A stretch of DNA of 64,000 nucleotides, from contig NC_068988.1 of the NCBI RefSeq assembly GCF_001194135.2, positions 54,914,133-54,978,132 of the forward strand, in the 5' to 3' direction. Origin of the DNA: Octopus bimaculoides (lineage: Eukaryota). A model generated the notes under the pieces. The model ran no database searches, was not told the origin of the DNA, and worked only from the letters and a program-made list of their open reading frames with translations. Below, piece by piece: positions 7,790 to 60,365 of the stretch. Numbering within the stretch: position 1 is the first letter of the stretch; each line of letters begins with the position of its first letter. The position numbers and the translations under genes are program-made.

Positions 7790-8870
7790 AAGTAAGTGGT
7801 GAAAGACCTGGATATGTATAGAGTTGGGTGAGGCTACCAGATAGCAATGATACAGAGGAACAGGACTGGGGACTGAGAACTAGGCATAGTGTATGGAGTT
7901 ACATGTGGGTAGAACACACAGGTCAGGGGCTAGCAGATAGCAATAATAGAGTGAAACAGGAGCATGTGGGTAGAACACACAGGATGGGGGTAAGCGGAGA
8001 GCAATGATACAGTGGCACAGGGCCAAGAGGACAGGATTAGGGAGTAGGAGGTAAACAAAGTACATGAAGAGGAAATGTGAAGAAAAGAAGAGATGTAGAG
8101 ATATATTTTGGTTTGTTGTGGTAGAGTGTGTGTGAAGTTTTCTTGTTAAGTGTGGATGGGACACACGGCACTTCTAGAACTCAGTTTCACTGACGTGGAT
8201 GGGTCTTCTCAAGAACATATTGCCAGACATCTTGGTTCATTGTCATTTTGTGCGTGAGGCCCAACTTCCTGAGATCGGTCCTTACCATTTCATCCCCTGT
8301 CTTCCTGGGTCTCCCTCTTCCACGAGTACCATCCACTTTCAGTGATTGGCACTTCTTTATGCAGCTGCCCTCATTCATATGAATTACATGTCCAAACCAG
8401 CATAGTCTTCTCTCTTGCATACTACATTTGATTCCTCTTATGCCCAACTTTCCTCTCAATACATTTGCACTTTGCCATACATGTACACTGATGCTGCACA
8501 TCCATCTGAGCATATTACCTTTGTTTCTCTCCAGTCTATGCATGCCTTCTGCATTCAGAGCCCATGTCTTACTACCATAGAGTATAGCCATTCACACATA
8601 AGCATCATATAGTCTACCTTTCACTCTGAGAGAGAGTCCTTTTGTTGCCAACAAATGTAATAGCTCTCTGAACTTCTTCCACCCAATTCTTATTCTAGAG
8701 ATAATACTTTCAGAGCATCCTCTGCCATTGCTAATTTGGTTATCTAGGTAACTGAAACTATCTACAATCTTGAGAGCCTCCAAGGCATTTGAGAGAATCT
8801 AAGTCCCATGTGCTCTTAGTGCTTTTTGTTCCTGCACATCTGCCATATACAAAGATGACTTTATCTGAAT
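7790..8870 (-). mobile_element. RTE-clade LINE fragment (RT C-terminus plus proximal 3'UTR)
   Basis: ORFs 8592-8783 and 8187-8591: IVDSFSYLDN...WKKFRELL...LYGSKTW...WFGHVIHM...RGRPRKT. Confidence 0.85.
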
Positions 8871-17464: not shown

Positions 17465-17750
17465 GTGAGATCGTTACCAGTGCCGATGGACTGGCTCCTG
17501 TGCAGGTGGCACGTAAAGTATACCATTTTGAGCATGGCCGTTGCCAGTACCGCCTGACTGGCCTTCGTGCCTGTGGCACGTAAAAGCACCCACTACACTC
17601 TCGGAGTGGTTGGCGTTAGGAAGGGCATCCAGCTGTAGAAACTCTGCCAAATCAGATTGGAGCCTGGTGTAGCCTCCTGGTCCACCAGTCCTCAGTCAAA
17701 TCGTCCAACCCATGCTAGCATGGAAAGCGGACGTTAAACGACGATGATGT
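17465..17750 (+). mobile_element. RTE 3'UTR and (GAT)n tail, young copy
   Basis: Near-identical to 44072-44300 and 51610-52000; CpGs retained. Confidence 0.85.
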
Positions 17751-22310: not shown

Positions 22311-24799
22311 TATACATATAAACAAAAATACCCTGTTGTTGATGTTGAAATTCCAGTGAAGGAGCCAGGCAGGCAGGGAGGGTTAGTAATGGATTCAAGA
22401 ACTAAGATAGAAAATAAGGTTTGATAGAAAACAAGAGATATATAGTGGGAAATAGTATACTGCATGCATTTTCAGGAAAGAGTCTACTGTAGTAAACAGA
22501 ATACATGGATTTGAGACAATTCACAATCTCAGATTTTAATTTCATGTGTTGAATTCAACAACTATTGAAATTCATTATCTAATTAAATATGTAATTCATA
22601 AAACATATGTACCCATACACTTTGTAATTCCTGTCAGTATTTGTATATATATATGTATATATATTGTATATATTTTTTCAGAAATATGCCTTTAGAGACA
22701 ACAACTAGTATGTGAAGAATTATTTATTATTTTTGATGTCTGAACCAGCATGTATTGAATATATTTTGCTATATAATACTAACAACATTTTGATGTGTTA
22801 CTTTTTCTTCCTTCTAATCCTGTTATTAGTAGAAATGTTGTGTAAGTCATAGGGTGTGGGGACACCTAATGAAGACTTCTTCCTGTAATAATTCAGAAAT
22901 CAATACTTGACTGGTTTTCTTATACATTCTTCCATGGGACCCAAGAAAAGTAATCGAGCATCAAATGGCTCTGCTAGTATTGAATTCATTTTAAATAACT
23001 CATTTACGAAAACAACTCATAGATGAAAGAGCTATATCTATAACCTTTTTGTTTGGAAGAAGTTATCTTTAGTATAGTGTTCTCACCCAAATGCTTGCAT
23101 AAGAATAGACTCCTCTAAAAAGCAATCAAAGGCCAGGTGTTAGTGATAAGGTAACAAATTAAATTTACTACTCTGGAATAATTTACCAAAGTTTACCCAA
23201 CATCTGATGTGCTTCCTGATAGTTTCCATTGACCTAATCACACTCACTAAGCTTTGTTTGATCTGGAGTTATGCCATGCAGTGTACAATCTTGCTTACTT
23301 TGTGATTTTAGTACATTTTATCACTAAGTACATTTACATTTGTTTTGTGATCAATAATTTGGCAAGTGCACTGAAAGCTATGCTTTGCTGATGACCTCAG
23401 GTAAATGCTGAAACATGGTCAAGTTGTCTCCCATAATTGCTGAAAGCACTGAAAATAATACTAGACATGGATTAATATTGTGGTTTCTTCACTGTAACTC
23501 TATCTATCAAATCTTGGACAACTGAAAGAATTTTAAAAATAATGGAATACAAAAACTGAAAAATCAGCTTGAAAAATTACTGTATTTTAACATGTATAAG
23601 GAACCCTAATTTTAGGGTTTAAAATTTAGAAAAAAAAAAGGTTTTGTAAGGGATTGTAATAGTATCCATGTATAAGAAACTCCTATATTTTCTTAACCTA
23701 ATTTTTGACAAAAAAGGGTTCCGTATACACATTAAAATACAGTAATTCTTTTTATTATTTTGAGGTTCAATTATTAAGATACTAAGTCAGTAGTTCTAAA
23801 TCTTTCAAACATAATGGCCCAAATAGTCCAAAGAATATTCTTGGATTTAATTGTTTTTGGCTTTACAGCTCTGTTAGAAGTTATTCTCAGTCATGTGTTC
23901 TTTAGTAAAAGTTTTTTTGTTTCATATAGATTTATCATCACTGTCACTATCATTGTATCAACCAGACTATCAGATGTTATTATACATCACTGGTCACAAT
24001 GTGTTCCTTGCATTGTTGTAGCTTTCAAATGGTGTCACCCTAACTGGCCAGGTGGGCAAGCCAACATTCTCCCTGAACAGGATGCCAGTCCATTGCAGGG
24101 TTACTCATTTTTAGTTGAGTGAACTGGAGCAACACAAAATAAAACATTTTGCTCAGGAACACATGCTGCTGGTCTTGAAATCAAAACCATGATCCTGCTA
24201 TCATGAGTACAACACCCTGACCACTTGGCCATGTGCCTTCATACATTTATTATAGTATTTCTTAAATTAGTTTGTAATTTTATAATTTAAAAATGTTTGT
24301 GTGTTCACATTGGCTTTGCCTATCAATATTCTCTATGGCTGTTACTTTAATACTGAAATCAATTTATTGGCTTTTCTATGTGTGTGTTGTTCACCTTTTA
24401 ACAAAGCTCCAGATTTTGCATGATATGTTGTTCTCATATAACATTTCCGGAGTAAGTAATAGATAAGCGTGTGTGTGTGTAAGTTAAAGGATCTTGTCTT
24501 TAGAGCTAACTAGTGAAGGTAAGAAATCTATTTTTGATCTTGGTAGATCTCTTTAGCAAAGTTTATTTATATCTGTTGATAAGACTTAGAGGTCATTAGT
24601 ATATGTAGAAATATATATATAATTTAATGTCCATTTTTTTACTTGCTTGTGTAAGTCAGATGGAATTTATTGTGGCAAGTTTTCAATGCCAACCCTCACC
24701 TGTTTCCAAGCAATATTGGAAATTACTGTGCTGGTATGATAGTGACAATCAAGAAAACACTGACATGCACACATGGCTCAATATGTCGAAAAGGTTTTG

Positions 24800-26265
24800 A
24801 TAGAAATTCAATACACTGTACCCAGTGCAAGCTATAGACATATAAGAGGTGTAGTGGTATCACATGAAGATTAATAGAGAAAGTAGTCTTTCTGTGTGGC
24901 AGATTGAAAGTACAACAAACACTAAGAATGTATGGAAAATAGACTTCTTCAAATGTCCAGGGTAATCCTTAGAAGTAGTAGATAGCTTCCATTACCTAGG
25001 TGACCAAGTTAGCAGTGGAGGAGGAAGCTCTGGAAGTATAGTTTCTTCAATAAGAACAGTCTGGGCAAGGGCTACTCCCTCAGAGTGAAATGTAGATTGT
25101 TTGATACCTGTGTATGAACAGCTATGCTACATACAGTGAAATATGGGTTGTGACTACAGAGAACATGTGAAGGCTTGAAAGAGATGAAGCCAGCATGCTT
25201 CATTGGATGGGTACTGTCAGTGTGCATGTAGAACAGAGTGTTAATGATTTATAAGAAAAATTGGGTATTAGAAACATCAGATGTTGTGTGTAAGAGAGAA
25301 AACTGCACTGATGTGGTCATGTGATATGTATGGACGAGGACAGCTGCATAAAGAAATGCCAGTCTCTAATAGTGGAGGGAATATCTGAAAAGAGTAGACC
25401 CAGGATGACGTGGTATAAAGTGATGAGAAATGCTTTTTAAATGTTGAGCCTCACAGAGGAGATGACAAGGGATCGAGACTTCTGGCAATTTGTTGTGTTT
25501 GAGAAGACCCGTCAAGCTAAGTAAAATCATAGCCATCAATACATACAGGCATATCCTTTATGACCATACCCCACTCTCACATACACTCACACACACACAC
25601 ACTCTATCTTCTGTCAAAGCATCTTCACAACTCCTCTTCCCAACACCCCTAACACTCGATGCTGGCCCCTCAACTCTCTCACATGTCTATCCGCACACTC
25701 TCCATGCCCTCACATGTATGCCACAGCCCCCTCTCAGCCACTCCAAATCCTTTCACTATCACATGCTGACCCTAAGCATCTCCTCCCACACTCTTATGGA
25801 ACATCCCCCTCTACTATTTATACTCCCTCACACTGTTCCCTGTGATTAGCCCTCTTTTACTCACTCTGATTTTCTCTCTATCATACTCTAACCTCTTGCC
25901 CAGCACACAGCCACTTCTCTCACTTACACTTACTCTCTCAGCTGAGAGGTTTTTGTCTTGCAAGCCACTTGGTGAACCTACTGGTGCCATATAAAAAGTA
26001 CTTGTGCTAGCGCCTTGTGAAAAGTGCCTCTGTTGGTGCCTTGTAAAAAACACACATGCTGGTGCCTTGCTGGTTCCACATAAAAAGCACCCAGTACACT
26101 CTTTAAAGTGGTTGACATTAGGAAGCCATCTAGCCATAGAAACCATAGTATGCATGCTGAAACTGACAATTGGAGCCTGATGCAACTCTCCAGTTTGCTA
26201 ACTCCTGTTAGACTGTCCAGTCTACGTCAATGTCACAGGGATAATGATTATGATAATGATGACAA
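24800..26265 (+). mobile_element. Old RTE-clade LINE, 5'-truncated, with long C/A-rich 3'UTR and GAT tail
   Basis: Decayed CTQCKL.TYKRC, LEVVDSFHYLGD, HSEIW, GHV...RPRMTW, LEKTRQAK* followed by about 730 nt UTR ending in (GAT)n. Confidence 0.8.
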
Positions 26266-27911: not shown

Positions 27912-29573
27912 GTGAGAAAACTTTTACTTTATTAATCCTTTGTGGCACTTCTCATCTTTTGGTTCTCTCTGTGTCACTCTTATTCATTCTCTGCATGAAA
28001 GTAATGATTTCAAATTTTGGCACAAAACCTGCAATTTTAGAAAGTGGGTAAGTCAATTACGACCCCAGTAATCAACTGGCACTTATTTTATTGACCTTGA
28101 AAAGATGAAAGCAAAGTCAACCTCAGCAGAATTTGAACTCAGAACATAAAGACAGACGAAATGCTGCTAAACATTGTGCTAATGATTCTGCGAGCTCGCT
28201 GCCTTATTTCTACATGAAAATAATAAAATTGATTAAGCAAAGGACCTTTTATTTATGAAGTGGTGGAATGCAATCAATTGGCTTGGTCCTATCATCATCG
28301 ACCTCAGCAAGAGAAAAATCAATCATTGCACTATTGAGATTTGAACTCACAAATAGGTGCAGGCATGACTGTGTGGTTAAGAAATTTGCTTTCCAATAAT
28401 GTGGTCTTGTGCCAATCCTACTATTTATTATCTTAGGCAACTGTCTTCTGATATATCTCCACTCCACAGGCCAACCAATGGATTTTGTAGACAGAAACTG
28501 AAAGAAGCTCGTCTTGTGTGTGTGTGTGTGCTGATGTGTAATTTTGCCTCATCATCACATGATGGTTGTAAATGAGCTTCGTCATCCTACAAGCAGTGTT
28601 GTTTATTTTCAGTCTCCTATGAAAAACCTGTTTGGCTATTAGGAAATATTACCTTGCTTGGAAACAGGTGTGGCTTTGCAATGGGAAGGGTATCCAGCTG
28701 TAGAAAATCTGTCTCAACAAATTCTGTCTTGTGCATGCAAACAAAGAAAAGCGGATATTAAATGATAATGACAATGAAATATGGAGTAATGACGTAGCTA
28801 ATTTAAACGATATAAATCATTGTCCATTGTTTGAAGTAGCTTCGTCATTCATTTTATTATTTACTGTAATAGGAAAAATAATTAAAACTGAATTTTAGTT
28901 TAGCTGGTCTTGAGTGTCTCTTCTTTTGAAACTCAATTTTCATTAGTTTTAACAGAGAGGAAGGTGTAAGTCTACAGAAAATCCATTGTCCTATTAATTA
29001 ATTACATTTTTTTTTCTTCGCTACTTTGAAGTATGATGACCTTAATTTATCTTAAAGCAAAGTTGGACATGAAAGTATTAAGAGTTTATACACTGCTTAC
29101 AGCAATGAATGTACTTTGTAAAAAAAGTACCTACTTACAGCAGTAATTTTTTCTTCAGTCTTCAATGACTCCTATTTATAACCATAAATTGTACTTCTCC
29201 AAAATATCTACATACAGTAGTGATCTGTACTTCACTTCTTAATACCACCTATTTTCAAGTAGAGTTCAAATACATTGCCTGGTAAGTGTTTTTACCAAAC
29301 ACAGTGGAAAAACCAAGGACAAACTACAGACTGTCAATTCTTTAGAGATATAGTGATTCAGACAGTTGTTACTCTTTATTTAGTATTAATGCTGTGATGT
29401 TCTTTAGTTTTGAAGTTACTCTCTTTTCGATTTTTATTTTGTTGAAAAGTATGACTTTAGGTGTGGATATGGCTATGAGAGTAAGAAGTTTTCTTTTCAA
29501 GTATGTGATCTTCCACTATAGTTCCAGGCTGACCAAAGCTTTGTGAATGGATTTGGTATGCAGAAACTGAAAG

Positions 29574-29803
29574 CCAGCAAGCTGGCAGGAACGTTAGCAC
29601 GTCGGGCGAAATGCTTAGCGGTATTTTGTCTGTCTTTACGTTCTGAGTTCAAATTCCACCGAGGTCGACTTTGCCTTTCATCCTTTTGGGGTCGATGAAT
29701 TAAGCACCAGTTATGCACTGGGGTCGATATAATCAACTTAATCCATTTGTTTGTCCTTGTTTGTCCCCTCTATGTTTAGGCCCTTGTGGGCAGTAAAGAA
29801 ATA
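29574..29803 (+). mobile_element. tRNA-headed SINE, family A (Meta-domain-like), nested in a family C SINE
   Basis: gagttcaaattcc B box, gtcgactttgcctttcatcc domain; 12-bp TSD agaaactgaaag at 29562-29573 and 29804-29815; relatives near 270, 28050, 30215, 33130, 42040, 42730, 44690 and 44990. Confidence 0.85.
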
Positions 29804-29872: not shown

Positions 29873-30619
29873 NNNNNNNNNNNNNNNNNNNNNNNNNNNN
29901 NNNNNNNNNNNNNNNNNNNNNNNNNNNNNNNNNNNNNNNNNNNNNNNNNNNNNNNNNNNNNNNNNNNNNNNNNNNNNNNNNNNNNNNNNNNNNNNNNNNN
30001 NNNNNNNNNNNNNNNNNNNNNNNNNNNNNNNNNNNNNNNNNNNNNNNNNNNNNNNNNNNNNNNNNNNNNNNNNNNNNNNNNNNNNNNNNNNNNNNNNNNN
30101 NNNNAAAAAAAAAAAAAAAAAAAAAACTGTCTTAACGAATTCTGTTCAATCCATGCTAACATATAAAAGTGGACATTAAAACGATGACAATATACTGTTC
30201 ATTTTAAGTGGGCAAGCTGGCAGAATTGTTAGCATACCAGACAAATTGCTTAGCAGCATTTCATCTATCTTCATATTTTGAGTTCAAATTCTGCTGAGGT
30301 CAACTTTGCCTTTCATCCTTTCTGGCTTGATGAAATAAGTACCAGTTGAGCACTGGGGTCACTATAATTGCTGGCCTTGTGCCAAAAATTATATCATTGC
30401 TGGCCTTGTGCCAAAAATTTGAAACCAACATACTATTCCTTTGATTTTCCTGTTGACTGTTGAGTTAATAATTTGTTATAATGACCATCACCATTGGTTA
30501 GCTTTAACTATTGCAGAGTTATCTCCATTCCAACTTATTATGTATGTATCTATTGATTTCTTACCTAATATAGTGACAACAACCTTTTGATTACTTTTGT
30601 CTTTCCACATTGTATATAT

Positions 30620-41890: not shown

Positions 41891-42406
41891 TTAAATCTGT
41901 TGTTCTCTCGTACTCACTCCCTGCTAACATCTCGTCAGCTCAACTACCTTACCTTTTCCAATTCAGAAATATTCTTTCATAAAGTTTCAAATGAGTCCTT
42001 CTTAGATTTACCATTTTAAAAAAGACATGTTTTAGTAAAGGCAGTGAGCTGGCAGAATCGTCAGCATACTGAACGAAATACTTAGCAGTATTTTGTCCAT
42101 CTTTGCATTCTGAGTTCAAATTCCACTAAGGTTGATTTAGTCTTTTATCCTTTTGGGCTTGATAAAATAAGCACCATTTGAGCACTGGGATTGATGTAAT
42201 CGGCTTAAACTACGGCTGTGTATGAGTATAAAAAATTGCATCCTTCTGTCATACCATGTTGAGCTGGCATGGAAGAGCAGGCTCATCAAACCAGTATGAT
42301 CTCAAACCATTCTCTGGTGGAGAGAACATGCTGAGGCCCTCATCCTGCAGTGGGCTCATGGGCAATCTAATCCAATTACATTTGTAAAATTTTGTCTTCT
42401 TTTCAG

Positions 42407-42481
42407 CCTCATCATCAGATTTGAATGAATTCGATGCTTTACCAAAATGTCGTCAAGAACTCCCAGATGATTTTCTTACTG
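42407..42481 (+). CDS. PIKFYVE: PIKfyve coding exon 11 (SSSDLNEFDALPKCRQELPDDFLT)
   Basis: ttttcag acceptor, gtacgt donor; 75 nt, phase 1-1. Confidence 0.78.
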
Positions 42482-42971
42482 GTACGTTATTATGAATTTT
42501 CTTTCTTTAAAACATTTTCATTATGATATCATTGCAATGGATTAGTAGAGTCTTTAGAGCATTGGATAAAATGTCTTGTGGTATTTGTTCTAGTTCTTTA
42601 TGTTCTCTCTTCAAATCCCTCTGAGATTAAATTTGCCTTTTGTGCCTCCAGTCCAGTACTGGGCTCAGTTTAACCAAATAACTATCTGAAACCACTGGCC
42701 TCATTCTTAAATCAGAAACATTATTATAAAGGCAATGAGCTAGTAGAATTGTTAGAGCATCAAGCAAAATGCCTCATTGTATTTGTTGCAGTTCTTTACA
42801 TTCTGAGTTCAAATCATGCTGTGATAAATGTTGCCTTTCATTTTTCTGGAGTTAATAAAAGAGAGTGCCAGGAAAGTACTGGAGGTGAAGGTATTGTCTC
42901 ACACTTCCCTTCAGAATTGCTGGTCTTGTGCTTAAACCAGAAACCATTATTATTATTATTATTATTATTAG

Positions 42972-44300
42972 GGCCTTAGAGTCAACCTAGCTAAAACCAA
43001 AATCCTAATAAGTAGGAAGGTAGATAAAACACAAACCCCTTCAGGTAGATGGCCCTGCTCAGTATGTAGAAAAGGAGTAGGTAGTAACTCTATAAGATGT
43101 ACCCGGTGCAAGCTATGGACACATAAGAGGTGCAGCAACATCAAAGGCAGGTTAACTAGCAAGTTAGTTTTTGTTTGTGGCAGATGTTCAGGTGCAATAA
43201 AGACTGCAAACAAACAGGAAACAACTTCTATCTCATTCCAGGGTGAAAAACTAGAGGTAGTCGATAGCTTCCGCTATCTGGGCGACCAAGCTAGTAGTGG
43301 GGGTGGGTGCGCTGAAAGTGTAGCTGCTAGNNNNNNNNNNNNNNNNNNNNNNNNNNNNNNNNNNNNNNNNNNNNNNNNNNNNNNNNNNNNNNNNNNNNNN
43401 NNNNNNNNNNNNNNNNNNNNNNNNNNNNNNNNNNNNNNNNNNNNNNNNNNNNNNNNNNNNNNNNNNNNNNNNNNNNNNNNNNNNNNNNNNNNNNNNNNNN
43501 NNNNNNNNNNNNNNNNNNNNNNNNNNNNNNNNNNNNNNNNNNNNNNNNNNNNNNNNNNNNNNNNNNNNNNNNNNNNNNNNNNNNNNNNNNNNNNNNNNNN
43601 NNNNNNNNNNNNNNNNNNNNNNNNNNNNNNNNNNNNNNNNNNNNNNNNNNNNNNNNNNNNNNNNNNNNNNNNNNNNNNNNNNNNNNNNNNNNNNNNNNNN
43701 NNNNNNNNNNNNNNNNNNNNNNNNNNNNNNNNNNNNNNNNNNNNNNNNNNNNNNNNNNNNNNNNNNNNNNNNNNNNNNNNNNNNNNNNNNNNNNNNNNNN
43801 NNNNNNNNNNNNNNNNNNNNNNNNNNNNNNNNNNNNNNNNNNNNNNNNNNNNNNNNNNNNNNNNNNNNNNNNNNNNNNNNNNNNNNNNNNNNNNNNNNNN
43901 NNNNNNNNNNNNNNNNNNNNNNNNNNNNNNNNNNNNNNNNNNNNNNNNNNNNNNNNNNNNNNNNNNNNNNNNNNNNNNNNNNNNNNNNNNNNNNNNNNNN
44001 NNNNNNNNNNNNNNNNNNNNNNNNNNNNNNNNNNNNNNNNNNNNNNNNNNNNNNNNNNNNNNNNNNNNNNNCATAAAAGACACCATTTCGAGCGTGGCCG
44101 TTTTCGTGCGGGTGACACGTAAAAGCACCCACTACACTCTCTGAGTGGTTGGCGTTAGGAAGGGCATCCAGCTGTAGAAACTCTGCCAAATCAGACTGGA
44201 GCCTGGTGTTGCCATCTGGTTTCACCAGTCCTCAGTCAAATCGTCCAACCCATGCTAGCATGGAAAGCGGACGTTAAACGATGATGATGATGATGATGAT
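42972..44300 (+). mobile_element. Young 5'-truncated RTE-clade LINE spanning a gap; RT contains a PHD finger
   Basis: Stop-free frame 42972-43330 (GLRVNLAKTK...PHD...LEVVDSFRYLGD); after the gap, 3'UTR and (GAT)n tail match the other RTE copies; gap length fits the missing ORF end plus UTR. Confidence 0.85.
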
Positions 44301-44559
44301 ATGTTTGGCTTTTGCTTTGCGTTTATACAAATTGACTCCAAGTCTCACCCAGAGACCTTAAGAGACAGCAAGTCAGAAGTTCAAGTTGGTGTGTTGTGAC
44401 TAGGGTGTCATATATTTGATTTTGAACAGGGTATTGTTCTCTAGAATGTCTGTCAAAACCTAAGCAAATTAAAAGTTTGTTTTAAAAGTAATTTGATTAT
44501 AAGATGATAGTGTCATGTTAAGATGACAGTAAAAGGTGTTTGCTGTTATGTACATTTAA

Positions 44560-44665: not shown

Positions 44666-44929
44666 ATTGTTGTTATCATCATCATTAGGATGGTGAGCTT
44701 GCAGAATCATTAGCACACTGGACAAAATGCTTAGCGGCATTTCGTCCATCTTTGTGTTATAAGTACAAATACTGCCAAGGTTGACTTTGCCTTTCATCCT
44801 TTCGGGATTGATAAATTAAGTACCAGTAGAACACTGGAGTCAATGTAATCGACTGTCCCCCTCCCCCAAATTTCAGGCCTTGTGCCTATAGTAGATAGGA
44901 TTATTATCATAATTATTATTATTATCATA

Positions 44930-51560: not shown

Positions 51561-52000
51561 GACCGAGACCTTTGGAAATGTGCTGTGCGTGAGAAGACCC
51601 GGCAAGCCAAGTAAGATCGTTGCCAGTGCCCCTGGACTGGTTCTTGTGCGGGTGGCACATGAGATGCACCATTTTGAGCGTGGCCGTTGCCAGTACCGCC
51701 TGACTGGCTCCTGTAGGATTTTCGAGCGAGATCGTTGCCAGTGCCCCTGGACTGGCTTGTGCGGGTGGCACATAAAAGACACCATTTCGAGCGTGGTCGT
51801 TTTCGTGCGGGTGACACGTAAAAGCACCCACTACACTCTCTGAGTGGTTGGCGTTAGGAAGGGCATCCAGCTGTAGAAACTCTGCCAAATCAGACTGAAG
51901 CCTGGTGTTGCCATCCGGTTTCACCAGTCCTCAGTCAAATCGTCCAACCCATGCTAGCATGGAAAGCGGACGTTAAACGATGATGATGATGATGATGATG
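51561..52000 (+). mobile_element. Young RTE 3' end (ORF end DRDLWKCAVREKTRQAK*, UTR with about 114-bp internal duplication, GAT tail)
   Basis: Direct homology to 44072-44300 and 17465-17750. Confidence 0.88.
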
Positions 52001-53574: not shown

Positions 53575-53880
53575 GAATCTATTACCTCTGCTGGCAACAA
53601 ATCTACTTCTTCAAACGAGAAGTAGATTATATATTGCTTGTGTACAAAGTATGATGTTGCATTGAAGTGAGACACGGGCATTGAATGCAGATGTAGAAAG
53701 GTTTGAGAGAAATAAAGCAAACATGTTTAATGTAAATATGCATGAGTAATGTTGTATAGATGAGCTGAGAATAAGAGGAATAAGCTGTAGTTGCAATAGA
53801 CAGCTGTGTTGGTACTGATATGTAGTGCATATAGATGATGACAGATGGGTAAAGAAGTGCCAGAAATGCAAGTCTTTGGA
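53575..53880 (+). mobile_element. Decayed RTE LINE fragment
   Basis: LLPLLAT...RLYIACVQS...SET.ALNADVERFERNK matches the 8187-8783 family. Confidence 0.7.
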
Positions 53881-53895
53881 CCCACACAATGTGGC

Positions 53896-54960
53896 ATGTA
53901 CTCAATTGAATGACAAAAAAGGGGCCTTCCACATGCTCATATCCTGCTTTGGCTCTCATCGAAGATCAAATCCACTGACATTGACAAGATAATCTCTGCA
54001 GAGCTTCCTGATCCAGCTTCAGACAAAGTACTATACAAAATAGTTAAGGCAAACATGGTGCATGGTCCATGTGGGCATGGATTCAATATAAACTCACCAT
54101 GCTTGAAAGACAGCGTATGTTCAAAAAGGTTTCCAAGGAGGTTCCTACAAGAAACTCAGACAGGTGCTGATGGGTATCCATCATACAGGCAGAGAAAACC
54201 AGAAGACGGCAGTTTCACAGCAACTATTGGACAGCACGAGGTTGATAATAGATGGATTGTTCCATACTGTCCACTCCTGTCAAAGACTTTCAATGCCCAC
54301 ATCAATGTTGAGTTTTGCAACTCTGTTAAGTACGTTTGTAAGTATGTGAACAAGGGTTCTGAAGCTGCAGTGTTTGGACTTCAACAAGAATACTGCCAGG
54401 ATGAGGTGACGCACTATCAGGTGGGACTGTACATAAGTAGTAACGAGGCTTTCTGGCGCATCTTTGGCTTTCCACTTCACCAACAACACCCTGCCATTCA
54501 ACAGCTGGCAATGCACCTAGAATACGGTCAAAGGGTGTACTTCACCGATGCTAATGCTTCTCTGTTGGGAGAGGAACCGAGGGATAGCACACTCACTGCA
54601 TTCTTCAGGCTTTGTCAAGTTGATCCATTCATTCAAACCTTGCTGTATCCACAGATTCCATCGTACTACACTTGGAATGGAAAAAAATGGGCCCCAAGGA
54701 AAGCAGGTCAAAATGTTCATGGATACCCTGGCATTAAGTTTGACACTTGCCTTGGGCGAGTACACACAGTGCATCCCACTCAACAAGAGAACTTCTACCT
54801 CCATCAACTACTGCATGAGGTCAGAGTGCCAATGTGTTTCCAGGCTCTAAAAGCCGTTCATGGACAATATGTCTGCACAACATACAGAGAAGCCAGCTAT
54901 TGACAAGGTCTGTTAGAAAATGGTGCACAATGGGATGCAACTATGGGAGAGGCTTTTTAC
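53896..54960 (+). mobile_element. Helitron Rep (HUH endonuclease) fragment
   Basis: YSIE*QKRGLPHAHILLWL (HUH), IDKIISAELPD, MVHGPCG, VDNRWIVPY, KYVCKYVNKG (YxxKY), YISSNEAFWRIF; open 53914-54903. Confidence 0.92.
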
Positions 54961-59830: not shown

Positions 59831-60207
59831 GTGAGTTATGGATTTTATAGATTTGTTTATAGATTTTATAAATTGTTTATAAAAGATATTTCATGGTATG
59901 AATTTTATTGATCTGCTGAAGGTTGTCTAGTAAGCAGATGTTTCATTGGAAATAGTAAATAAGTTATATTACCTTGGTGATACTATTAGTATTGAAGGCA
60001 GGCTAATAGACTAATTCAATCACAGTGGTAGCACTGTAGTTAAATGTTTGAGATATAATATATAAACCAGACTTTATGAATGATGTGTGAGAAATGTGAT
60101 ATGTGATGCTGAAGCATGGATGAAAACTGTGTTGTGGTTTATAGATTCTGTCCATAATAAATAAAACTTCAGGAAAACTTTTAACAATGGTTCAATTTGG
60201 ATTCTCT

Positions 60208-60365
60208 TCATCATCATCGTTTAACATCCGCTTTCCATGCTAGCATGGGTTGGACGATTTGACTGAGGACTGGTGAACCAGATGGCTGCACCAGGCTCCA
60301 ATCTGATTTGGTAGAGCTTCTGCAGCTGGATGCCCTTCCTAACGCCAACCACTCCGAGAGTGTAA
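60208..60365 (-). mobile_element. Young RTE 3' tail, minus strand
   Basis: Reverse complement of the 51830-51990 tail, CpGs retained. Confidence 0.85.

What the first reader, a model, noticed from the sequence alone, without database searches (positions are those of the whole stretch)
42972..43330. Complete PHD finger inserted inside the reverse-transcriptase core of an RTE LINE
The stop-free frame reads GLRVNLAKTK (late RT motif), linker, then C-x2-C-x10-C-x2-C-x4-H-x2-C-x14-C-x2-C (CSVCRKGVGSNSIRCTRCKLWTHKRCSNIKGRLTSKLVFVCGRC, 43056-43187), then LEVVDSFRYLGD (primer-grip motif). This is exact C4HC3 PHD spacing with the typical W-x-H. Decayed remnants of the same insert occur at 24820-24910 (+) and about 8790-8870 (-), so it is a family trait. 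PHD fingers are established histone-tail readers and are known in ORF1 of some LINEs. Placement between RT motifs is unusual, and I cannot say whether it has been described for this family. Inference: a chromatin-reading module that could steer target-primed insertion, for example into active gene bodies like this one.
Basis: partly seen in the sequence, partly recalled or inferred. Interest (0 to 1): 0.75.

Follow-up and report, generated by a model that had tools for sequence, protein, structure and literature searches.

The report
PHD zinc finger inside LINE reverse transcriptase
A dead, 5'-truncated copy of an octopus RTE-type jumping gene preserves an intact PHD zinc finger between two catalytic motifs of its reverse transcriptase; the finger is conserved in all ~105 intact relatives examined, but its strongly positive charge suggests it grips target DNA or nucleosomes rather than reading histone H3 tails in the textbook way.

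Summary
Window 42972-43330(+) is a stop-free 119-codon fragment reading RT motif 6 (GLRVNLAKTK), linker, C4HC3 PHD finger (43056-43187), linker, RT motif 7 (LEVVDSFRYLGD). It is cut off by an assembly gap.

- **PHD identity:** Pfam PHD scores above its curated cut-off. AlphaFold2 predicts a PHD fold, and all 50 best PDB fold matches are PHD fingers.
- **Family trait:** All 105 relatives of about 930-1116 aa examined (APE + RT, single ORF) carry the insert, 101 with intact ligands. The eight ligands are 94-97% conserved, like the catalytic motifs, while both linkers are hypervariable.
- **Comparators:** Related catfish elements have only a short loop of about 20 aa between the motifs.
- **Named hosts:** Octopus and the cnidarian Hydractinia.

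Function is inferred. The site corresponds to "motif 6a", which in R2 elements wedges into target DNA. Two methyl-lysine cage positions are aromatic. However, the acidic H3R2-binding residue is absent and the core carries a mean net charge of +5.9.

I favour a target-site (DNA or nucleosome) contact module (about 0.45). Canonical H3K4me reading is a rival (about 0.25). I found no paper describing it; databases annotate it automatically. I rate it a new variant of a known kind, of moderate interest.

The parts
42972..43330 (+). 5'-truncated, stop-free ORF fragment of a PHD-bearing RTE-type LINE (RT motif 6 to the start of the thumb), cut by the assembly gap
   Evidence: It is 87% identical to octopus protein P0001 and 49-53% identical to full-length elements.
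42972..43001 (+). RT motif 6 (GLRVNLAKTK)
   Evidence: N5, K8, T9 and K10 are 95-98% conserved in 225 homologous segments. It aligns to L1 ORF2p GYKINVQKSQ.
43002..43055 (+). Variable N-terminal linker, ending in the conserved G-K/R-aromatic-P (W27 at 43050-43052)
   Evidence: This is among the most variable segments of the family (top-residue frequency 0.39). pLDDT is low in the models. Position 27 is Y/W/F in 84% and His in 8%.
43056..43187 (+). PHD-type C4HC3 zinc finger. Ligands: C29 43056, C32 43065, C43 43098, C46 43107, H51 43122, C54 43131, C69 43176, C72 43185. The conserved Trp W49 is at 43116-43118.
   Evidence: Pfam PF00628 scores 28.3 bits, above the cut-off of 24. Ligands are 94-97% conserved. 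AF2 pLDDT is 77-92. The Foldseek top 50 PDB matches are all PHD fingers, with TAF3 5xmy_C at TMt 0.61 and rmsd 2.1 A.
43188..43250 (+). Variable C-terminal linker
   Evidence: This is the most variable segment (top-residue frequency 0.29), with low pLDDT.
43251..43286 (+). RT motif 7 / primer grip (LEVVDSFRYLGD)
   Evidence: F100, Y102, L103 and G104 are 96-99% conserved. It is collinear with catfish VEEFRYLGS.
43331..44072 (.). Assembly gap (run of N) that removes the rest of the ORF
44073..44301 (+). 3' tail module (two-tier hairpin plus (GAT)n) shared by this RTE family and a SINE-like repeat. It is possibly the 3' end of the same copy.
   Evidence: The same hairpin, with a compensatory A-U to G-C change, ends the ORF of the full-length element L002.
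24778..25512 (+). Second, decayed 5'-truncated copy that begins inside the PHD finger. Its 3'UTR runs to about 26260.
8199..8843 (-). Third 5'-truncated copy, starting at the C-terminal edge of the PHD finger and running to the ORF end
53612..53899 (+). Fourth fragment of the same family (thumb region only)

Best explanation
**Shown.** The fragment is a fossil copy of a single-ORF APE+RT LINE of RTE type. Its reverse transcriptase carries an insertion of about 70 aa between motif 6 and motif 7 (the primer grip). The insertion is a compact C4HC3 PHD-type two-zinc module held by two hypervariable, probably flexible linkers. Within intact elements the module is almost as conserved as the catalytic core, so the element needs it.

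**Inferred.** The module occupies the position called 'motif 6a' in R2 elements. In R2 cryo-EM structures that loop wedges into the upstream target DNA during target-primed reverse transcription. The module is strongly cationic, with conserved K26, K34, K52, K/R53 and R71. It also has an invariant exposed-type Trp and a second aromatic residue. I therefore propose that it is a target-site contact module. During target-primed reverse transcription it would hold the nicked target (DNA backbone, possibly on a nucleosome surface) next to the primer grip. [quoted passage not shown] A contribution from a methyl-lysine half-cage is possible but secondary.
For: - **Position of the insert.** BLASTP of P0124 against the PHD-less catfish element P0286 breaks exactly at residues 592-662 (71 aa against 5 aa). 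Alignments to L1 ORF2p, R2 and group II intron RTs all stop at motif 6.
- **Essentiality.** All 105 relatives of about 930-1116 aa (of 120 proteins longer than 900 aa; the other 15 are longer catfish fusions) carry the insert, 101 with intact ligands. Ligands are 94-97% conserved. Mean top-residue frequency is 0.66 for the PHD, 0.74 for the RT core, 0.61 for APE, 0.57 for the thumb, and 0.39/0.29 for the linkers.
- **Fold.**. The full-length model has mean pLDDT 90 and pTM 0.84, with the PHD at 85-93 and the linkers at 68-75.
- **Charge.** Net charge of the C1-C8 core is +5.9 +/- 2.0, range 0 to +12, n=174; the window copy is +11. Acidic residues after Cys3 occur in only 5%.
- **R2 motif 6a contacts or wedges into target DNA.** PMC11204384, PMC12180492, PMC13188248.
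- **DNA-binding PHD precedents.** BAZ1A PHD and BRD1 PHD2 (PMC5636791).
- **No other accessory domain.** Pfam finds only Exo_endo_phos, RVT_1 and PHD.
Against: - No binding data exist.
- I could not inspect model coordinates or PAE, so the orientation of the finger relative to the primer grip is unknown.
- R2 uses a different endonuclease and a different target geometry from APE-type LINEs, so the 6a analogy is topological, not homologous.
- The best sequence and fold matches are H3K4me2/3 readers (TAF3, BPTF, Pygo, ALFIN-like 3, KDM5B PHD3).
- Two cage positions are aromatic, which fits histone reading equally well.
- A basic residue pair alone does not make a PHD bind DNA (PMC5636791).
Confidence: 0.45

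Rival explanations
1. Canonical histone reader. The finger binds the H3 N-terminal tail, probably methylated at K4, through a Pygo/TAF3-like half-cage. It tethers or licenses the RT on active chromatin and so biases insertion sites.
For: - It is a bona fide PHD.
- The best fold and sequence matches are H3K4me2/3 readers. TAF3 shows 32% identity over 47 columns. Pygo1 aligns YPCGIC...KWFH with the family's [YWF]PC.VC...W.H.
- The aromatic at C1-2 is 84% Y/W/F, freely interchanged. Trp at His-2 is 96% and never swapped for F/Y. This is the pattern expected of a cage wall.
- The flexible linkers would let the finger reach a tail.
- Precedents exist for chromatin readers in mobile-element machinery: the RAG2 PHD (PMC3520747) and PHD fingers in CR1/L2 ORF1 (PMC4120745).
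Against: - The acidic residue after Cys3 occurs in 5% of homologues.
- The position equivalent to Met/Tyr of ING2, TAF3 and BPTF is Ser in 90%.
- Net charge is +5.9 and never negative.
- The residue roles in the reference readers are recalled from my own knowledge and were not checked here.
Confidence: 0.25
2. The finger does not contact the target. It could be a zinc-stabilised brace of the palm/thumb junction, a template-RNA (3' hairpin) binding element, or a docking site for a host or element protein.
For: - Cationic zinc modules with an exposed Trp also bind single-stranded RNA, as retroviral-type zinc knuckles do (own knowledge).
- The family has a conserved 3' hairpin that the RT must recognise.
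- Some PHD fingers bind non-histone proteins. Pygo-BCL9 and MLL1 PHD3-Cyp33 entries appear among the hits.
Against: - A purely structural brace would not need hypervariable flexible linkers on both sides.
- It would also not need such strong conservation of surface basic residues.
- There is no direct evidence for an RNA or protein partner.
Confidence: 0.2
3. It is a chance cysteine pattern, a captured host exon in this one copy, or a gene-model artefact.
For: None beyond the fact that the window copy is a short fragment next to an assembly gap.
Against: - The same insert lies in the same place in 105 full-length ORFs and hundreds of fragments.
- One contiguous reading frame spans motif 6, the PHD and motif 7 in the raw DNA.
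- L002 is a single 1102-aa ORF on a 3.7-kb contig.
Confidence: 0.01

Closest known systems
RT 'motif 6a' of R2 non-LTR retrotransposons (B. mori, zebra finch and turtle R2 cryo-EM structures)
   Same: It is a lineage-specific insertion after RT motif 6 and before the primer grip. In R2 it protrudes or wedges into upstream target DNA during TPRT (PMC11204384, PMC12180492, PMC13188248).
   Different: R2 6a is a loop, not a zinc-finger domain. I detected no sequence similarity, because R2 alignments to P0292 stop at motif 6. R2 uses an RLE endonuclease plus N-terminal ZnF/Myb domains, whereas this element uses an N-terminal APE and has no other DNA-binding domain detectable by Pfam.
PHD fingers in ORF1 (or at the ORF2 N-terminus) of CR1/L2 (Jockey superfamily) LINEs
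   Same: A PHD module recruited by a LINE, interpreted as domain shuffling (PMC4120745).
   Different: Those lie in ORF1p or at the N-terminus of a separate or extended ORF, not inside the polymerase. They belong to a different LINE superfamily. That paper describes ORF2 structure as 'highly constrained'.
RTE-2_OV / O. bimaculoides RTE (Petrosino et al. 2022, PMC9115989)
   Same: An octopus RTE-clade LINE with a single 1109-aa ORF containing EN, RT and 'a zinc finger ... relatively rare in RTE elements', and a microsatellite at the 3' end. Host and architecture match this family.
   Different: The paper calls the finger C2H2 and places it terminally. No sequence is held in the text or supplements, so I could not tell whether it is the same domain or family.
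H3K4me2/3-reading PHD fingers (TAF3, BPTF, Pygopus, ALFIN-like, ING)
   Same: Same fold and ligand spacing. Aromatic residue two positions before Cys1 and Trp two positions before His.
   Different: It lacks the acidic residue after Cys3, has Ser at the third cage position, and is strongly basic instead of acidic.
DNA-binding PHD fingers (BAZ1A PHD, BRD1/BRPF2 PHD2)
   Same: A PHD fold that lacks the acidic H3-recognition residues and carries a positively charged surface (PMC5636791).
   Different: BAZ1A also lacks the aromatic cage, which this family partly retains. Those fingers are parts of chromatin regulators, not of a polymerase.
PHD-less RTE-type elements (catfish Hemibagrus/Silurus proteins; BovB recalled from memory)
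   Same: They show 36-37% identity across APE and RT, with a collinear thumb carrying RLRWFGH and RGRPR..W motifs.
   Different: They have only about 20 aa between motif 6 and motif 7, and no cysteine ligands.

Membership tests
PHD finger (Pfam PF00628) | C4HC3 ligand pattern with canonical spacing | tested here: met
   C-x2-C-x10-C-x2-C-x4-H-x2-C-x14-C-x2-C at 43056-43187. Ligands are 94-97% conserved in 225 homologues.
PHD finger (Pfam PF00628) | Profile score above the curated gathering threshold | tested here: met
   28.3 bits against a cut-off of 24, E=1.8e-6. Competing C1, RING and FYVE-like models fall below their cut-offs.
PHD finger (Pfam PF00628) | Small two-stranded sheet plus short helices in a cross-braced fold | tested here: met
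   The AF2 model has strands 40-42 and 49-51 and helices 52-55 and 70-73, with pLDDT 77-92. All 50 best PDB fold matches are PHD fingers. This is a prediction only.
PHD finger (Pfam PF00628) | Binds two zinc ions | not testable with these tools
   Needs metal analysis of purified protein.
H3K4me2/3-reading PHD finger | Aromatic residues at the two main cage positions (before Cys1 and two positions before His) | tested here: met
   Position 27 is Y/W/F in 84% (+His 8%). W49 is 96% conserved. The cage roles of the reference residues are from my own knowledge.
H3K4me2/3-reading PHD finger | Third cage residue (Met/Tyr three positions before Cys3) | tested here: not met
   Ser in 90% of homologues. 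Pygo has Ala here (own knowledge), so a half-cage is not excluded.
H3K4me2/3-reading PHD finger | Acidic residue after Cys3 and an acidic surface to hold H3R2 and the basic tail | tested here: not met
   Acidic residues occur in 5% at position 44. Core net charge is +5.9 +/- 2.0 and never negative.
H3K4me2/3-reading PHD finger | Measured binding to H3 peptides | not testable with these tools
   Needs a peptide array, ITC or NMR.
RTE-clade LINE | Single ORF encoding an N-terminal APE endonuclease and an RT, with no ORF1 | tested here: met
   L002 is a 3687-bp contig with one 1102-aa ORF. Pfam finds Exo_endo_phos plus RVT_1. The full-length model matches L1 ORF2p and R2 structures.
RTE-clade LINE | No C-terminal CCHC knuckle or RNase H domain | tested here: met
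   No such Pfam hit at E<=1e-3 in six full-length members.
RTE-clade LINE | 3' end formed by a short simple-repeat tail | tested here: met
   (GAT)n follows the stop in L002 and lies at window 44281-44301. [quoted passage not shown]
RTE-clade LINE | RT phylogeny places the element inside the RTE clade | tested here: inconclusive
   No reference set was available. An octopus EN-RT-Znf LINE was placed in RTE by phylogeny in PMC9115989.
R2-type motif 6a target-DNA contact | Insertion between RT motifs 6 and 7 | tested here: met
R2-type motif 6a target-DNA contact | Contacts target DNA during TPRT | not testable with these tools
   Needs biochemistry or cryo-EM.

The most novel reading that the evidence does not exclude
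An epigenetic reader domain is built into the catalytic core of a polymerase. The PHD finger at the RT motif-6a position would recognise a histone mark, or the nucleosome itself, at the nicked target and gate or steer target-primed reverse transcription. That would give a whole, widely distributed RTE lineage (molluscs, cnidarians, marine plankton eukaryotes) chromatin-state-dependent integration without any separate targeting protein.
Probability: 0.25. Interest if true: 0.8.

Novelty: new variant of a known kind. Interest (0 to 1): 0.55.

Why it matters
LINE ORF2-type proteins are regarded as architecturally constrained. Accessory domains are normally found at the termini or in ORF1.

Here a complete, independently folding zinc-finger domain sits inside the RT, between motif 6 and the primer grip. 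It is conserved almost as strongly as the catalytic core across a large lineage.

R2 structures show that this spot touches target DNA. The finding therefore offers a natural experiment on how APE-type LINEs engage their target or chromatin. It also provides a compact (about 1,040 aa) single-protein system in which a targeting module could be studied or exchanged.

It also warns annotators about two errors. Octopus 'PHD-type zinc finger' gene models of this kind are LINE fragments. Several 'bacterial' MAG proteins of this kind are eukaryotic LINE contamination.

Tried and rejected
1. **Literature.** Eight full-text searches found no description of a PHD finger inside an RTE RT. PHD hits in the shrimp and conference papers were a grant code and RAG2.
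2. **Link to RTE-2_OV.** The text and 16 supplementary files of PMC9115989 hold no protein sequence and no position for its zinc finger. The link stays open.
3. **Host identification of the metagenome relatives.** Cluster look-up and contig look-up gave no organism names, only 'Tara Oceans marine metagenome' for L002. Named hosts came only (Octopus vulgaris, Hydractinia; O. bimaculoides).
4. **Alternative zinc-finger classes.** C1, RING/U-box, FYVE and zinc-ribbon models all scored below their Pfam cut-offs. They were absent from the top fold matches except one weak FYVE hit at rank 47. I rejected them.
5. **Geometry of the finger relative to the active site.** The structure tool returns no coordinates or PAE, so this could not be examined.
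6. **Pfam accession PF27108.1.** It appears in the precomputed annotations beside PF00628 but is not in the local Pfam copy, so I could not identify it.
7. **Continuity across the N gap.** Whether the post-gap sequence is the same copy's 3' end is plausible in order and orientation but cannot be proven. The same 228-nt module also occurs as an independent repeat.

Full report
**Observation**

The window region 42972-43330(+) reads in frame 1 as a stop-free 119-residue peptide. Its order is GLRVNLAKTK, an 18-residue linker, CSVCRKGVGSNSIRCTRCKLWTHKRCSNIKGRLTSKLVFVCGRC (43056-43187), a 21-residue linker, then LEVVDSFRYLGD and 14 more residues.

It is preceded by an (ATT)n tract. It is cut at 43331 by a 742-base run of N.

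Pfam's PHD model matches residues 29-72 over its full length at 28.3 bits, above the curated cut-off of 24, with E=1.8e-6. The C1, RING-like and other zinc-finger models stay below their cut-offs.

tblastn with relatives finds four 5'-truncated copies of the family in the window:
- 8199-8843(-)
- 24778-25512(+), which is decayed and has stops inside the finger
- 42972-43330(+)
- 53612-53899(+)

**What the element is**

The closest database proteins are Octopus bimaculoides gene-model fragments. UniProt auto-names several of them 'Zinc finger PHD-type domain-containing protein' or 'Reverse transcriptase domain-containing protein'.

An exhaustive HMMER search with the 119 residues found 2095 clusters (at 50% identity) at E<=1e-3 and 552 at E<=1e-10. 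Among them are proteins of 880-1042 aa with Exo_endo_phos, then RVT_1, then PHD immediately after the RVT_1 match.

A profile search returned 120 proteins longer than 900 aa. Of these, 105 (about 930-1116 aa) carry the insert, and 101 have a perfect C4HC3 pattern. Most sit on 3.3-4.9 kb metagenome contigs, that is, on whole elements.

One of these contigs, L002 from Tara Oceans, has a single 1102-aa ORF with a 288-nt leader. A (GAT)n tail follows right after the stop.

Four lines of evidence point to an RTE-type LINE:
- The single APE+RT ORF.
- The absence of any other Pfam domain.
- The microsatellite tail.

An octopus EN-RT-zinc-finger LINE of 1109 aa has been placed in the RTE clade by others (PMC9115989). 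Whether that is the same family could not be settled.

Named hosts of insert-bearing proteins are O. bimaculoides, O. vulgaris and the hydrozoan Hydractinia symbiolongicarpus. The hosts of the many marine metagenome copies are unknown.

**The insert is precisely delimited and is a family trait under selection**

The remaining 15 long hits are catfish proteins (tandem-fused ORFs) that are 36-37% identical across APE and RT. Between SRSKTEYM and VEEFRYLGS they have only about 20 residues.

The BLASTP alignment of P0124 to P0286 breaks at query residues 592-662 against five subject residues, and it resumes at motif 7. The multiple alignment shows the same clean gap.

Conservation was measured in 225 distinct homologous segments, pseudogene fragments included:
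- The eight ligands are 94-97% conserved.
- This matches the motif 6 Asn/Lys/Thr/Lys and the motif 7 Phe/Tyr/Leu/Gly.
- Also conserved are P28, the G-V-G-x-N-S-I loop (about 90%), W49 (96%), K52 (79% Lys; 85% Lys or Arg), K/R53 (92%), L61 and F/Y67.

Conservation by region, as mean top-residue frequency across 101 full-length elements:

| Region | Mean top-residue frequency |
|---|---|
| RT core | 0.74 |
| PHD core | 0.66 |
| APE | 0.61 |
| Thumb | 0.57 |
| N-terminal linker | 0.39 |
| C-terminal linker | 0.29 |

The two linkers are the most variable parts of the protein.

**Fold**

- AlphaFold2 on the window's own fragment with 40 homologues gives pLDDT 77-92 for residues 21-70. It predicts the two short strands and helices expected of a PHD finger.
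- The 50 best Foldseek matches in the PDB are all PHD fingers. TAF3 bound to H3K4me3 leads, at TMt 0.61, rmsd 2.1 A and 32% identity over 47 columns.
- A full-length model of P0292 has mean pLDDT 90 and pTM 0.84. The finger scores 85-93 and the linkers dip to 68-75.
- Overall the model resembles human L1 ORF2p and R2 proteins.

**How it probably works**

Where the finger sits is shown. What it binds is inferred.

*Position.* The insertion lies after RT motif 6, directly before the primer grip. R2 workers call an insertion at this place motif 6a. [quoted passage not shown] By topology, a domain displayed here on flexible linkers is well placed to touch the target site during target-primed reverse transcription. 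This is an analogy, not homology. APE-type elements may also route the target differently.

*Ligand.* The evidence is split.

For a methyl-lysine reader:
- The best sequence matches are KDM5B PHD3, ALFIN-like 3 and Pygopus. The Pygo1 alignment puts YPCGIC...KWFH opposite the family's [YWF]PC.VC...W.H.
- The aromatic residue two positions before Cys1 is Y/W/F in 84%, freely interchanged.
- The Trp two positions before His is 96% conserved and is never replaced by Phe or Tyr.

Against a canonical H3 reader:
- The residue after Cys3 is acidic in only 5% of homologues. By my own knowledge, it is acidic in most H3-binding PHD fingers.
- The residue three positions before Cys3 is Ser in 90%. That position is Met or Tyr in ING2, TAF3 and BPTF, again from my own knowledge.
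- The C1-C8 core has a mean net charge of +5.9 +/- 2.0 (n=174). It is never negative, and the window copy is +11.

The combination of no acidic H3-recognition residues plus a basic surface is how the BAZ1A PHD finger was recognised as a DNA binder. BRD1 PHD2 is a second such case (PMC5636791).

*Verdict on mechanism.*
- I favour a target-site contact module that binds DNA or a nucleosome surface next to the primer grip (about 0.45).
- A Pygo-like H3K4me half-cage reader is the main rival (about 0.25).
- A structural, RNA-binding or partner-binding role comes third (about 0.2).

**Novelty**

PHD fingers are documented in ORF1, or at the N-terminus of ORF2, in CR1/L2 LINEs. That study describes ORF2 structure as highly constrained (PMC4120745).

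None of eight full-text searches found a PHD finger described inside an RTE, or any LINE, RT. Repbase and Dfam notes and subscription journals were not searchable. UniProt and Pfam automatic annotation already flags the domain.

I therefore rate it a new variant of a known kind: a LINE with an accessory module, at the motif-6a site. Interest is moderate. The window copy itself is an ordinary dead fragment.

**Limits**

- Host range beyond three named species is unknown.
- RTE clade membership rests on architecture and on a from-memory comparator.
- Residue roles in the reference PHD readers are recalled, not verified.
- No coordinates or PAE were available to place the finger in three dimensions.

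Noticed in passing
window 44073-44301(+); also 51772-51999(+), 17564-17749(+), 60205-60364(-), 26083-26143(+); L002 3548-3625: A ~228-nt repeat directly after the N gap ends in a two-tier hairpin (CGUCC..CCAUGCUAGCAUGG..GGACG) followed by (GAT)n. The same hairpin ends the ORF of the distant Tara Oceans PHD-RTE L002, with a compensatory A-U to G-C change (CCACGCCAGCGUGG). It is followed there by the same (GAT)n tail. This looks like the RTE 3' recognition stem-loop, borrowed by a SINE-like repeat that is abundant in the window.
   Followed up: partly
window 43331-44072: A 742-base run of N (assembly gap) removes the thumb-coding part of the element. By comparison with copy 2, about 1,040 nt are expected between the flanks, so the gap size is probably an estimate.
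   Followed up: partly
window 42040-42202, 42540-42700, 42720-42971; also 28019-28175(-), 29580-29738, 30215-30368, 44696-44850: There are several copies of short SINE-like repeats. The one just upstream of the RTE fragment ends in (ATT)n, which abuts the fragment's 5' truncation point.
   Followed up: no
window about 42407-42482(+): A possible host exon lies about 500 bp upstream of the fragment. An open stretch is flanked by a ttttcag acceptor-like site and a gtacgt donor-like site. I saw this by eye only.
   Followed up: no
proteins P0327, P0425, P0471: Proteins of this eukaryotic LINE family are deposited as belonging to bacterial MAGs (Terriglobia, Herbaspirillum, Candidatus Thiodiazotropha). 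This is most likely eukaryotic contamination of the bins.
   Followed up: no
proteins P0261-P0348 from Hemibagrus guttatus and Silurus asotus: Catfish gene models of 1,500-1,800 aa are tandem fusions of two PHD-less RTE-like ORFs. UniRef names some of them 'ribonuclease H'. They served here as the no-insert comparator.
   Followed up: partly
precomputed Pfam column: An accession absent from the local Pfam copy, PF27108.1, is listed beside PF00628 on many of these proteins. It may be a newer family built on this very finger. I could not look it up.
   Followed up: no
protein P0001 (octopus, 87% identical to the window fragment): The nearest database relative has lost two ligands (His to Tyr, and the last Cys to Arg). 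The window copy keeps all eight, so the window fragment is closer to the ancestral state than the annotated gene model.
   Followed up: yes
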